Position numbers and translations under genes: made by a program. DNA of 63,843 nucleotides, counting the filler, from Intoshia linei (Eukaryota; Animalia; Orthonectida): NCBI GenBank assembly GCA_001642005.1. It is 7 parts of 7 records of this genome, joined end to end, with 100 filler letters (N's around TTAATTAATTAA, not from the genome) between each part and the next. Parts side by side here need not be neighbours in the genome. Positions count along the whole stretch, not along the records: positions 46,621 to 54,712 come from LWCA01001483.1; 6 more parts are not named here. One strand, written 5' to 3'. Below the pieces are notes generated by a model. The model was given only the letters and a program-made list of their open reading frames with translations, made no database searches and was not told the origin of the DNA. Shown in pieces: positions 49,129-51,804 of this stretch. The first letter of the stretch is position 1; each line of letters starts with the position of its first letter.

Positions 49129-51804
49129 TCAAAGTCCATGTTGATTATATCCAAATATATGTAAATATGTATTACTTTTTCTACAAATGTATCGAAATTT
49201 TTCATTACAATAATAATCTCCTACCAAAGCAGCTTCAAATTTAGTTAATACAATGGCACCACAATTTTGTCTGCCTTCGTAGTTGTTGGGTTGTCCACTT
49301 TCCCATTTCGCAGGTATACCTAAAATATAATCTTATATTTAATTTTCAGTTTTTGTATTAATAATAGCAATCCAGTGTATAGTACTGGAAATGGGTTGAT
49401 GGTCATATTATCATCCTACACTGACTAGGGCAGTGGTTTTCAACTGGGGGGCCGCGAAATTTATCAGGGTAGTCGTGAGAATTTGAACACAGTATAAACT
49501 ATAAATAAAACTGAATATGCTTTTTTAATATTTTCATGTATGTTAATTGATAAGATGTTTGAAGTATATAGAAAAATTTTGGGTCGCGAAAATTTTTTAT
49601 GTTCATAAGGGGGCTCGCGAACACAAAAAAATTGAAAACCACTGGACTAGGGACTTGATATTTTTAATTTTACAATTTAAAACGGTGTAATGTTTAATTT
49701 TATTGATACAAGACTTGAAATCTAGAATTTACCGTTTTATGACAATTTTTTAAGAAAATTTTTCATTCCACATACAATAAAAAAATAATTTGTACAAAGT
49801 GGTTTTCAACCTTTTTGTGTTCGCTACCCAAAAATTTTGTATATATTCCTAAGATCATATTAACATGTAAATAAAAAATATATTAATAAAATTTTCAAAT
49901 TCTCGCGACCCCGGTTGAATAATAGTTGTAACATACATATATGTATAAAACATACAATATATGAATTTTGCTTACCATTTGTATTATATAGTCTAAAACA
50001 TTCATCTAAATTTTGACAATCATGACAATTGTCGGATGCCATATAATTGTTGTAAGCAGAATTGCAATAACATTTTTCATCGTCCTAAATTATTCTATAA
50101 ATAAAAATATAAGCAATGTTTATTAAACATTTATTAAAATACCGTAAACAATGCATAAATATATTTTTCTCTGCAAATATTTACGCATTCATTTGCATTC
50201 ATATTTTCATAGGATGATTGAAATGTTACATTTGCCACATTTCTAAAACAACCTTGATATTTTACCGGATATCGATCTTAATTTTTTTAAATTAAATTAA
50301 TTTTATGAAATTTTTAATTTTATCATTTTTTGTATTTACAAGATTACAAATGTACAAATTTGTATTTTAACTAGTGTAAGTCCACGTGTTTACATTTTAT
50401 GGATAATATAACTTTAAAGCATGGACCGGCAACCTTCTGCCTCTCGTGGGCCACTTTTTATATCCAACAATTATACGGTCTCCGTTTTTGATAAATTTAT
50501 ACATACTACATTTCCATTTTAATTAAAGAGAAACACTACTAGTATATTCAAAAAAATAAAATCCAGGACGATTTGAAAATTCAATATTAAAATGATTATA
50601 ATGAGTCAATTGTAGTAGAAAATATTTAAAACAGTGTTTAAAAGTTGAAAAATTTCAAAATAAATAATTTACATATTTACTCAAAGGGCCACCAAAATTA
50701 TTCTGTGGACTATTGGTTGCCGATCCCTGCTTTAAAGTCTAACTAATATCCAACCTTTTTTTGCGAACCCTTTATCAATATTTTTTTTAAATATTTTGAT
50801 AATTTATATAAAAATGTGTTGGTTACAAATAAAAAATTTTTTCTTCCTTTTTAGTAGCTTCTTTGGGCGATCTAGGAATCACTGTTATAAATTATAACTT
50901 ATAATAATACATTTGATATTTTTTATTAATTAATAAAAATAAAAAAAAAGATTTTATGGTTATTTTTTTATCTTATTTAAAATTTATGCAAATAATCCAG
51001 TTTTATCAACTTTAGGAAATATGATTACCAATTTGTTTACGGACGCTTAGTAAATACTGAGATCCAATACCAGTGGTTCCCAAAAAAAATATTATCGACC
51101 CAATCATATTTTTAGAAAAGATATTAAAAAACTTATATAAGTACATATTAATATTAATTAAATGTAAATAAATATTAAAATAACACATTTGAAGCAAATT
51201 ATTGAGTTTTGTGACCTAATTTGGTACATTTGTCAACAAAGGAAATTTAATATAATGAAAAAGTAATCCACAATTTATTAATTAAATTTCAAAGACCTAC
51301 AATGTTAACAATTTTTAACGATTCTAATTTAATTTATAAATATATTTATTTCAGGCCCAGTCAGACTATGTAAACCCCCTGATAGGTCAAGCTCCATTTG
51401 GGAAACAATTGGAAAAATTGTAACAGACAAACAGCATACATTGTAGACTACAATTGGTAGTATACAAAGTGTACAAACACTTCAACATAAACATATATAA
51501 TTAATAAATCTTTGAAAATAAAATAATTACTGAAATGATGATGCCAATCTTTAGACAATGATTCATCGTACGCATTAATCCATATGTAATCAGACTGATA
51601 AGCTTTTGAAATTTCTTGTATTTGTTGAGATTCATAATCGTTGTACGGTACATATAGTTCACTTTTTCTATCAACGCATGTTATTATAGCATCTTTCCAA
51701 TTTTCAGGTTTTTCATAAAAAATAATACAAAATTTTTCATTACTTCCAATTTTCTGACAATCTACATTATGTACAATTATTATTAATACAATAGTAAATA
51801 ACAT
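49129..51804 (-). CDS. Secreted C-type lectin-domain protein with an internally inserted WSC domain, 4 exons; 3' end uncertain
   Basis: Exon 1 (51804-51531): signal peptide plus CTLD first half (FCIIFYEKPENWKDAIITC...IWINAYD...W). Exons 2-3 (50276-50143, 50084-49976): YQGCF...MNANECVNICREKYIYALFT/DDEKCYCN...NCHDCQNLDECFRLY. Exon 4 (from 49319): WESGQPNNYEGRQNCGAI...GDYYCNEKFRYIC. Confidence 0.8.
49431..49644. mobile_element. hAT MITE, 214 bp, intronic
   Basis: TIRs CAGTGGTTTTCAA / TTGAAAACCACTG. Perfect TSD GACTAGGG at 49423-49430 and 49645-49652. Confidence 0.92.
50420..50729. mobile_element. hAT MITE, 310 bp, intronic
   Basis: Termini CATGGACCGGCAACC / GGTTGCCGATCCCTG. Perfect TSD CTTTAAAG. 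Confidence 0.88.

What the first reader, a model, noticed from the sequence alone, without database searches (positions are those of the whole stretch)
49129..51804. C-type lectin domain split by a nested, phase-symmetric WSC module: a possibly switchable dual glycan-binding protein
Seen in sequence: exon 1 gives a signal peptide and the first half of a CTLD up to the WIG-equivalent WINA and the following W. Exon 4 gives the second half (W-x2-GQPNN...NC...C-x2-KFRYIC). Between them, exons 2+3 encode an 8-cysteine unit (YQGCF, C-x3-C, YA, CYC, C-x2-C, C-x3-Y) with WSC spacing. Established knowledge: CTLD and WSC usually occur as tandem domains, and the insertion point falls in the CTLD long-loop region just before the EPN/QPD sugar-specificity motif (here QPN, with GD at the WND position). 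Both flanking introns are phase 1, so skipping exons 2+3 would restore an in-frame ordinary CTLD (WHHHF-S-IPAKWESGQPNN). Inference: exon shuffling placed one carbohydrate-binding fold inside another, possibly under alternative splicing control in a secreted host-interaction or immune protein.
Basis: partly seen in the sequence, partly recalled or inferred. Interest (0 to 1): 0.85.

Follow-up and report, generated by a model that had tools for sequence, protein, structure and literature searches.

The report
WSC domain nested inside a C-type lectin
This gene of the parasite Intoshia linei encodes a small secreted lectin-like protein in which a second cysteine-rich binding domain (WSC) sits inside a loop of a C-type lectin domain; the layout is real, shared with one paralog and unusual, but nothing shows that splicing switches it on and off.

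Summary
Four minus-strand GT-AG exons (51804-51531, 50276-50143, 50084-49976, 49319-49129; intron phases 1, 0, 1) give a 235-aa protein. It is identical to GenBank OAF65028.1, a hypothetical protein of the orthonectid Intoshia linei. Exons 1 and 4 are the two halves of one C-type lectin-like domain (CTLD). Exons 2+3 (243 nt) encode an 8-cysteine unit that matches WSC by sequence (E 2.5e-5, below Pfam's cut-off) and by predicted fold (Kremen1 WSC, Z 6.4). A 790-aa paralog (OAF67902.1) has the same nested layout. Its insert is as conserved as the lectin halves (53% vs 55% and 65% identity) and all cysteines are kept.

New here: about 0.9 kb downstream lies a relic exon for the start of a second CTLD, as in the paralog. 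An old phase-1 donor sits inside exon 4. The locus is therefore a truncated duplicate of a receptor-like gene.

The exon-shuffling reading is plausible because the cassette is phase 1-1. Sugar binding is unproven (QPN and VGD replace EPN/QPD and WND). No other protein with this layout was found.

Verdict: a new domain arrangement built from known folds, of moderate interest.

The parts
51531..51804 (-). Exon 1 (274 nt, ends in phase 1): start codon, hydrophobic signal-like N-terminus, and the CTLD N-terminal half up to WINA...DWHHHF
   Evidence: Pfam Lectin_C positions 2-56 of 107, E 7e-5. Aligns to SIGN-R1 CRD residues 17-66.
50277..51530 (-). Intron 1 (1254 nt, GT...AG, phase 1). It is about 20 times the species' median intron and contains a MITE-like inverted repeat at 50411-50434 / 50715-50738.
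   Evidence: Median I. linei intron of 57 bp from PMC6543705.
50143..50276 (-). Exon 2 (134 nt): WSC N-terminal half with YQGCF and C-x3-C (Cys 1-3) and the conserved NVT glycosylation sequon
   Evidence: Pfam WSC positions 1-42 of 82, E 0.0016.
50085..50142 (-). Intron 2 (58 nt, phase 0, 12% GC), the typical size for this genome
49976..50084 (-). Exon 3 (109 nt): WSC C-terminal half with CYC, C-x2-C and C-FRLY (Cys 4-8)
   Evidence: All five Cys are conserved in the paralog.
49320..49975 (-). Intron 3 (656 nt, phase 1), mostly MITE-like elements with CAGTGGTTTTCAAC-type ends (about 49425-49909)
49129..49319 (-). Exon 4 as annotated (191 nt including the stop): CTLD C-terminal half (W-ESGQPNN...NC...VGDYYC...FRYIC) plus a 15-residue tail
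   Evidence: Pfam Lectin_C positions 70-107, E 0.0012. Aligns to SIGN-R1 residues 91-131.
49174..49176 (-). Ancestral phase-1 splice donor inside exon 4 (A|GT directly after ...ICRK). Reading through it gives the annotated tail.
   Evidence: Sequence. Joining it to 48261 gives CRK-K-TGNC, compared with CRKKDENC in the paralog.
48186..48261 (-). Relic or unused exon 5 (76 nt; AG acceptor before it, GT donor after it) encoding the start of a second long-form CTLD (NCKNG...KNCIYIS...ANW)
   Evidence: tblastn with P0002 residues 260-282, E 0.008. Pairwise BLASTP 12/23 identical, E 3e-6. Three-frame reading.
47961..47990 (-). Possible decayed continuation of the second CTLD (GEFYQYCKGL followed by two stops, out of frame with the relic exon)
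   Evidence: Three-frame translation. It has motif-level resemblance only and is not statistically supported.

Best explanation
The gene (A3Q56_07261 of Intoshia linei) encodes a secreted protein of about 25 kDa made of one long-form C-type lectin-like domain. A complete WSC (PAN/Apple-like, four-disulfide) domain is built permanently into that domain.

The WSC module lies between the W-x-W strand and the following x-x-x-W strand, which form the first hairpin of the long-loop region. It ends nine residues before the QPN motif.

The first and last strands of WSC are neighbours in its sheet. Its ends can therefore plug into a hairpin turn while the two lectin halves still close into one fold.

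The module arrived as a phase 1-1 cassette, now split by a small phase-0 intron, in an ancestor shared with the receptor-type paralog A3Q56_04383. That paralog has the layout nested CTLD, second CTLD, stalk, membrane span, tail.

The locus studied here is a duplicate that kept only the nested module. It now ends by reading through the old exon-4 donor, and the downstream CTLD exons have decayed.

Inferred function: extracellular ligand recognition (glycan or protein) through a combined surface formed by the WSC and the neighbouring long-loop face of the lectin domain.

Shown: the exon structure, the domain identities, the nesting, the conservation in the paralog and the downstream relic exon. 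Inferred: secretion, constant inclusion of exons 2-3, the binding role and the order of evolutionary events.
For: - Exon-wise Pfam hits to the two Lectin_C halves and to WSC.
- Whole protein P0001: Lectin_C 33.9 bits (cut-off 22.6) and WSC E 2.5e-5.
- P0001 is identical to the spliced model.
- Both halves align in order to one solved CRD, 4c9f_A (query 26-77 to chain 17-66, query 177-223 to chain 91-131), with about 75 extra residues between them.
- Paralog P0002 has the same order. Identity is 55% (CTLD-N), 53% (WSC) and 65% (CTLD-C), and all 8 WSC cysteines and the core CTLD cysteines (Cys26, 43, 192, 210, 218) are conserved; Cys16 is not.
- ESM Atlas model: residues 11-226 match CTLD clusters (about 130 aligned, TM 0.72 by the target). 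Residues 92-172 match WSC-bearing clusters (TM 0.74-0.78).
- AlphaFold2 model (pLDDT 52.5): the 30 best VIA rows are CTLDs spanning model residues about 13-223 (Z up to 10; codakine Z 9.4, rmsd 2.4 over 76 residues). Kremen1 WSC 5fws_A scores Z 6.4, rmsd 3.0 over 75 residues, for model residues 96-175.
- The two halves co-fold as separate chains with weak support: score 0.51 against a best control of 0.02. That mark was reached by 51 of 78 solved complexes and 2 of 108 mismatched pairs, but a pass at 0.60 or under is weak. The runs agree in at least 78% of contacts and the partner pLDDT is 55.
- Cysteine spacing (21, 4, 15, 2, 13, 3, 6) is close to Kremen1 WSC (25, 4, 16, 2, 17, 4, 8) (PMC5014086).
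- WSC sheet order is b1-b5-b3-b4-b2, so the end strands are adjacent.
- The downstream relic exon and old donor are shown.
Against: - The only public I. linei runs cited in 10.1101/235549 are genomic.
- The gene model may be purely computational.
- The WSC hit is below Pfam's gathering score (24.8 vs 27.8 bits; paralog 13.3 bits). The CGG motif that is strongly conserved in WSC domains is CFR here.
- Both structure models have low to middling confidence.
- The two introns flanking the cassette are 11 and 22 times the species median and full of repeats. The downstream part of the locus has decayed, so the whole locus could be on its way to becoming a pseudogene.
- Only two proteins, both from one species, show the layout.
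Confidence: 0.7

Rival explanations
1. One reading: exons 2+3 are a regulated cassette. Including them gives the nested two-domain protein. Skipping them gives an ordinary single CTLD, so the parasite can switch binding properties.
For: Both flanking introns are phase 1 and the cassette is 243 nt, so skipping keeps the frame, with junction codon AGT = Ser. The flanking introns are long (1254 and 656 nt) while the cassette's internal intron is 58 nt. That is the geometry in which exon skipping is easiest.
Against: - No transcript data of any kind.
- Phase symmetry is expected of any shuffled extracellular module and does not by itself indicate alternative splicing.
- The insert is as conserved as the host domain in the paralog.
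- After skipping, the hairpin would be about 6 residues shorter than in SIGN-R1, so the host domain seems to have adapted to carrying the insert.
- The long introns are explained by MITE-like insertions.
- In the paralog the first junction seems to carry only a roughly 57-nt unspliced intron (inference).
Confidence: 0.1
2. Gene-model artefact or dying gene. The locus is a decaying duplicate, and the four-exon model is what a gene predictor could still thread through it. No stable nested protein is made from this copy.
For: - The downstream CTLD exons have decayed, with a frameshift and stops after the relic exon.
- Introns are swollen with repeats.
- The annotated C-terminus is intron read-through.
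- There is no expression evidence.
- The cluster holds a single member from a single contig.
Against: About 220 codons over four exons are open. All splice sites are canonical, 13 of the 14 cysteines (all but Cys16) are conserved, and identity to the paralog is 53-65%. The sequence just downstream lost its frame within one exon. That contrast argues for selection on exons 1-4. Even if this copy were dead, the paralog shows the nested layout.
Confidence: 0.12
3. The protein is longer or has another C-terminus. The donor at 49176 is still used and exon 4 is spliced to the exon at 48261-48186. That would give a different short tail ending at the stop in the next donor, or further exons not recognised here. 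This is compatible with the nested layout.
For: The donor A|GTAAT and acceptor TTTACAG| are good. The frame and the CRK-K junction match the paralog. The 25-codon exon is open.
Against: Nothing resembling the rest of a CTLD, a stalk or a membrane span was found in the remaining 1.5 kb of the contig (tblastn at E up to 10). The next plausible piece is out of frame and ends in stops.
Confidence: 0.15

Closest known systems
Intoshia linei A3Q56_04383 (OAF67902.1, 790 aa; P0002), an uncharacterised paralog
   Same: It has the same CTLD(N)-WSC-CTLD(C) nesting, 54% identity, all WSC cysteines and the core CTLD cysteines (Cys16 is not kept), the same QPNNYEGRQ-C and VGDYYC motifs, and the same NVT sequon.
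   Different: It continues into a second complete CTLD (Pfam positions 279-392), a low-complexity stalk, a membrane span and a cytoplasmic tail. It has 19 extra residues at the exon 1/2 junction, probably an unspliced short intron (inference).
Polycystin-1 (PKD1) ectodomain
   Same: It is an extracellular protein that carries both a WSC and a C-type lectin domain, both implicated in ligand binding (PMC9672506).
   Different: There the two domains are separate beads on a string, with other domains around them. They are not nested. It is a huge 11-TM protein, and no homology beyond the domain families is implied.
Kremen1 WSC domain (PDB 5FWS) and yeast Wsc1 CRD (PDB 7PZ2)
   Same: Eight cysteines with near-identical spacing. 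The predicted fold matches Kremen1 residues 118-213 (Z 6.4, rmsd 3.0, 75 residues). The core is PAN/Apple-like.
   Different: The final loop is shorter here (22 vs 27-29 residues between Cys5 and Cys8). The conserved CGG motif is CFR. The Pfam score is below the gathering cut-off. Here the domain is an insert in another domain, not a free-standing module.
Canonical Ca2+-dependent C-type lectin CRDs (e.g. SIGN-R1 4C9F, langerin, codakine)
   Same: The overall fold prediction, the canonical cysteines, a WIGL-like WINA, and a QPN tripeptide at the EPN/QPD position.
   Different: An 81-residue domain is inserted in the first long-loop hairpin. WND is VGD, and the Glu before the third cysteine is Gln, so the Ca2+ site 2 ligand set is incomplete. 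Sugar binding cannot be assumed.

Membership tests
C-type lectin-like domain (Pfam PF00059) | Profile match above the curated cut-off | tested here: met
   P0001 scores 33.9 bits against a cut-off of 22.6, E 5.8e-8, in two stretches. Exon 1 and exon 4 hit the two halves of the profile.
C-type lectin-like domain (Pfam PF00059) | Canonical cysteines (C1-C4, plus the long-form pair) in order with a solved CRD | tested here: met
   Cys 16, 26, 43, 192, 210 and 218. Both halves align in order to 4c9f_A. The disulfide pairing itself is inferred. Cys16 is not conserved in the paralog.
C-type lectin-like domain (Pfam PF00059) | CTLD fold formed by both halves together | tested here: met
   Predicted models only. 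VIA Z is 8-10 for CTLDs over model residues about 13-223. Atlas TM is 0.72 by the target over residues 11-226. Split-chain co-folding scored 0.51 against a best control of 0.02, which is weak support. Model confidence is low to middling (pLDDT 52.5; Atlas 0.63).
Ca2+-dependent carbohydrate-recognition domain (functional C-type lectin) | EPN or QPD tripeptide, plus Glu, plus WND forming Ca2+ site 2 | tested here: not met
   QPN, Gln190 in place of Glu, and VGD in place of WND. It is therefore not filed as a proven sugar-binding CRD.
WSC domain (Pfam PF01822) | Profile match above the curated cut-off | tested here: not met
   24.8 bits against 27.8 (E 2.5e-5) for P0001, and 13.3 bits (E 0.1) for P0002.
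WSC domain (Pfam PF01822) | Eight cysteines with WSC spacing (pairs 1-6, 2-4, 3-5, 7-8 in Kremen1) | tested here: met
   Cys 101, 122, 126, 141, 143, 156, 159 and 165, compared with Kremen1 122, 147, 151, 167, 169, 186, 190 and 198. All are conserved in P0002.
WSC domain (Pfam PF01822) | Conserved CGG motif after the last cysteine | tested here: not met
   Both paralogs read C-F-R. The motif is described in PMC9024836.
WSC domain (Pfam PF01822) | WSC / PAN-Apple-like fold | tested here: met
   The Atlas model of residues 92-172 scores TM 0.74-0.78 to seven WSC-bearing cluster sets. The AF2 model scores Z 6.4 to Kremen1 5fws_A, 6.0 to 9vfr_G and 5.9 to the WSC region of glyoxal oxidase; apple domains score Z 5.9-6.0. 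These Z values are in the range the tool calls 'middling'.
Exon-shuffled class 1-1 module | Module bounded by introns of the same phase (1-1), with length a multiple of three | tested here: met
   Phases are 1 and 1, and 134+109 = 243 nt.
Exon-shuffled class 1-1 module | Same intron positions in relatives, with a donor module identifiable elsewhere | not testable with these tools
No closer WSC relative was found.
Alternatively spliced cassette | Transcripts both with and without exons 2-3 | not testable with these tools

The most novel reading that the evidence does not exclude
This is the first documented case of a whole independent domain nested in the long-loop hairpin of a C-type lectin fold. 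The WSC sits directly beside the (modified) Ca2+/sugar site, so the two folds form one composite recognition surface. In the parasite the phase 1-1 cassette is included or skipped by life stage to change ligand specificity.
Probability: 0.08. Interest if true: 0.8.

Novelty: new variant of a known kind. Interest (0 to 1): 0.45.

Why it matters
C-type lectin domains are among the most studied animal recognition modules. Their variation is normally confined to loop residues or loop swapping. A full 81-residue disulfide-rich domain grafted into the first long-loop hairpin would be a natural example of how far this scaffold tolerates insertion. It is maintained in two paralogs of an animal with a drastically reduced gene set. 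It is also a textbook-clean instance of a phase 1-1 module placed inside another module's coding sequence. For orthonectid biology it marks a small family (one secreted form, one membrane receptor form) as candidates for cell-surface or host-contact recognition. None of this is established functionally.

Tried and rejected
There are therefore no earlier notes, no reads, no read laying and no DNA of the paralog.
- Word-index homology searches found only the query proteins themselves: P0001 whole, P0002 residues 28-262, and P0001 residues 92-172 (one search was a parameter slip).
- A full HMMER scan with exon 1 found 8 hits. Only P0001 and P0002 have the insert.
- PDB sequence searches gave no WSC entry, either with exon 2 alone or with the two-sequence profile.
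- The exon-4 search gave spurious antibody light-chain hits from the 'VGDYYC' resemblance. These were ignored.
- AlphaFold2 with the two-sequence alignment failed (pLDDT 34). With eight sequences it reached pLDDT 52.5.
- Foldseek on the pLDDT 52.5 model gave only weak CTLD rows (best E 0.026).
- The split-chain co-folding test gave 'weak support' only.
- Other ORFs on the piece have no credible domain, and there is no Rfam family.
- Literature searches for a WSC or PAN domain inserted in a C-type lectin, and for Intoshia lectins, found nothing relevant.
The full-length searches used the database protein P0001. The hypothetical exon 1+4 'skip' protein was not built, searched or folded.
- Two mollusc Atlas clusters of about 226-236 aa carry both Lectin_C and PAN_1. 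I could not inspect them to see whether they are tandem or nested.
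Full report
**What is there**

The piece (46621-54712) has about 25% GC. On the minus strand lie four open exons with canonical GT-AG borders:

| Part | Coordinates | Length |
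|---|---|---|
| Exon 1 | 51804-51531 | 274 nt |
| Exon 2 | 50276-50143 | 134 nt |
| Exon 3 | 50084-49976 | 109 nt |
| Exon 4 | 49319-49129 | 191 nt, with stop |

- Intron phases are 1, 0 and 1. Exons 2+3 total 243 nt. The CDS is 708 nt.
- A full HMMER scan with the exon-1 peptide returned a 235-aa protein, P0001, identical over residues 1-91.
- Every exon translation is an exact substring of P0001, at positions 1, 93, 137 and 174.
- P0001 is GenBank OAF65028.1 / A0A177ASP9, 'hypothetical protein A3Q56_07261' of the orthonectid parasite Intoshia linei, on an 8092-nt contig.
All full-length analyses used this database protein. The exon 1+4 'skip' protein was left unbuilt.

**Domain identities**

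- Exon by exon: exon 1 matches Pfam Lectin_C positions 2-56 of 107 (E 7e-5), exon 4 matches positions 70-107 (E 0.0012), and exon 2 matches WSC positions 1-42 of 82 (E 0.0016).
- On P0001, Lectin_C scores 33.9 bits (cut-off 22.6). WSC scores 24.8 bits, E 2.5e-5, which is below its cut-off of 27.8.
- Against solved structures, one CRD chain (SIGN-R1, 4c9f_A) aligns in order with both halves: query 26-77 to chain 17-66, and query 177-223 to chain 91-131. About 75 residues are left over in between.
- That alignment puts QPN on EPN and VGD on WND.
- The insert has eight cysteines (101, 122, 126, 141, 143, 156, 159, 165). Their spacing closely follows Kremen1's WSC domain (122, 147, 151, 167, 169, 186, 190, 198; PMC5014086).
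- The CGG motif described as highly conserved in WSC domains (PMC9024836) is CFR here, and the last loop is shorter.

**Fold evidence (predictions only)**

- The ESM Atlas holds a model of this protein (pTM 0.54, pLDDT 0.63).
  - The whole model matches CTLD clusters over residues 11-226, with about 130 residues aligned (TM 0.72 by a 160-aa perlucin-like target).
  - Residues 92-172 match seven different WSC-bearing cluster sets at TM 0.74-0.78.
- AlphaFold2 failed with a two-sequence alignment (pLDDT 34). It reached pLDDT 52.5 with eight sequences.
- With the pLDDT 52.5 model, VIA-align against 48,161 PDB representatives gave CTLDs as its 30 best rows.
  - These rows span model residues about 13-223. 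Examples are CL-K1 (Z 10.0), codakine (Z 9.4, rmsd 2.4, 76 aligned) and langerin (Z 9.4).
  - Kremen1's WSC region (5fws_A residues 118-213) matched model residues 96-175 at Z 6.4, rmsd 3.0, 75 aligned.
  - Apple/PAN domains scored Z 5.9-6.0.
- Foldseek gave only weak CTLD rows (best E 0.026).
- Folding the two lectin halves as separate chains gave a score of 0.51 against a best control of 0.02.
  - The tool calls this 'weak support'. The mark was reached by 51 of 78 solved complexes and 2 of 108 mismatched pairs, but passes at 0.60 or under are weak.
  - The runs agree in at least 78% of contacts, and the partner pLDDT is 55.
- Taken together, the halves forming one CTLD and the insert being WSC-like are well supported for predictions, but they are not proven.

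**Where the insert sits**

- By the SIGN-R1 alignment, W87-H-H corresponds to the W-x-W strand and W178 to the Trp of the following strand. I take this labelling from general CTLD knowledge; it was not tested here.
- The WSC therefore replaces the turn of the first hairpin of the long-loop region, and ends nine residues before QPN.
- WSC has sheet order b1-b5-b3-b4-b2. Its first and last strands are neighbours, which suits insertion into a hairpin turn (inference).
- Without the insert this region would be about 6 residues shorter than in SIGN-R1.

**Conservation**

- Only one other protein among 1.84 billion representatives shares the family closely. It is P0002, OAF67902.1 (A3Q56_04383), also from I. 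linei, 790 aa.
- P0002 has the same CTLD(N)-WSC-CTLD(C) order.
- Identity is 55% in CTLD-N, 53% in WSC and 65% in CTLD-C. All eight WSC cysteines, the core CTLD cysteines (not Cys16) and the NVT sequon are conserved.
- P0002 then continues with a second CTLD (Pfam positions 279-392), a low-complexity stalk, a membrane span and a tail.
- The insert is thus under the same constraint as its host domain.
- P0002 has 19 extra residues exactly at the exon 1/2 junction, beginning with Ser (as A|GT read through would give).

**New observation: a truncated duplicate**

- tblastn of P0002 on the piece hit 48253-48185 on the minus strand (residues 260-282, E 0.008). The pairwise result is 12/23 identical, E 3e-6.
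- This is an open 76-nt exon (48261-48186) with an AG acceptor and a GT donor. It encodes the start of a second long-form CTLD.
- Inside exon 4, directly after ...ICRK, lies a good donor (A|GTAAT at 49176). Joined to 48261 it would read CRK-K-TGNC, against CRKKDENC in the paralog.
- Beyond the relic exon, only a 10-residue CTLD-like scrap remains. It is out of frame and followed by stops.
- No stalk or membrane segment is found in the remaining 1.5 kb.
- So this locus descends from a receptor-type gene like P0002. It has kept only the nested module, and its annotated 15-residue tail is read-through of the old donor.
- The contrast between four intact, conserved exons and decayed sequence just downstream argues that the nested module is still under selection.

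**Introns**

- The median I. linei intron is 57 bp (PMC6543705). Intron 2 is 58 nt, but introns 1 and 3 are 1254 and 656 nt.
- Both long introns hold inverted-repeat, MITE-like elements.
- Their length is therefore better explained by repeat insertion than by any regulatory design.

**Interpretation**

- A phase 1-1 cassette between the two halves of another module is what exon shuffling predicts (Patthy's class 1-1 rule, established knowledge).
- The alternative-splicing switch has no evidence for it.
- Conservation of the insert and the shortened host hairpin lean against a functional skipped form.
- Sugar binding is not established. Ca2+ site 2 is incomplete (QPN, Gln for Glu, VGD). WSC domains in Kremen1 bind a protein (Dkk), and those of polycystin-1 are reported to bind Wnts.

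**Novelty**

- WSC and CTLD are known together in polycystin-1, but as separate domains.
- I found no paper and no other protein with a WSC or PAN nested in a CTLD.
- My searches were limited, however. Two mollusc clusters carrying both Lectin_C and PAN_1 could not be inspected.
- I rate it a new arrangement of known folds, present in two paralogs of one reduced parasite. It is interesting to people who study lectin scaffolds and domain evolution, but it has no functional data.

Noticed in passing
window 49425-49909 (intron 3), also 52710-52723: MITE-like elements with CAGTGGTTTTCAAC-type terminal inverted repeats. There are 4 matches with up to 2 mismatches against 0.06 expected. They make up most of intron 3.
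   Followed up: partly
window 50411-50434 / 50715-50738 (intron 1): 24-nt inverted repeat, 92% complementary, with arms 280 nt apart (ACTTTAAAGCATGGACCGGCAACC type). This is a second MITE-like family.
   Followed up: no
window 48725-48935 and 47640-47850: Two direct copies (about 80% identical, about 215 nt) of a dispersed repeat flank the relic second-CTLD exon.
   Followed up: partly
window 51894-51918 / 51962-51986: 25-nt inverted repeat (80% complementary, 43 nt between the arms) lying 90-180 nt upstream of the start codon. Its meaning is unknown.
   Followed up: no
P0002 (OAF67902.1) residues about 108-126: 19 extra residues at the position of intron 1, starting with Ser. This is probably a short in-frame intron that the deposited gene model reads through.
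   Followed up: no
window 54145-54555 (+): A 136-aa ORF in AT-rich sequence with only sub-threshold, low-complexity Pfam hits. It is probably not a gene.
   Followed up: partly
ESM Atlas clusters: Mollusc protein clusters of about 226-236 aa carry both Lectin_C and PAN_1. Whether they are tandem or nested is unknown, and the answer bears on how unusual the Intoshia layout is.
   Followed up: no
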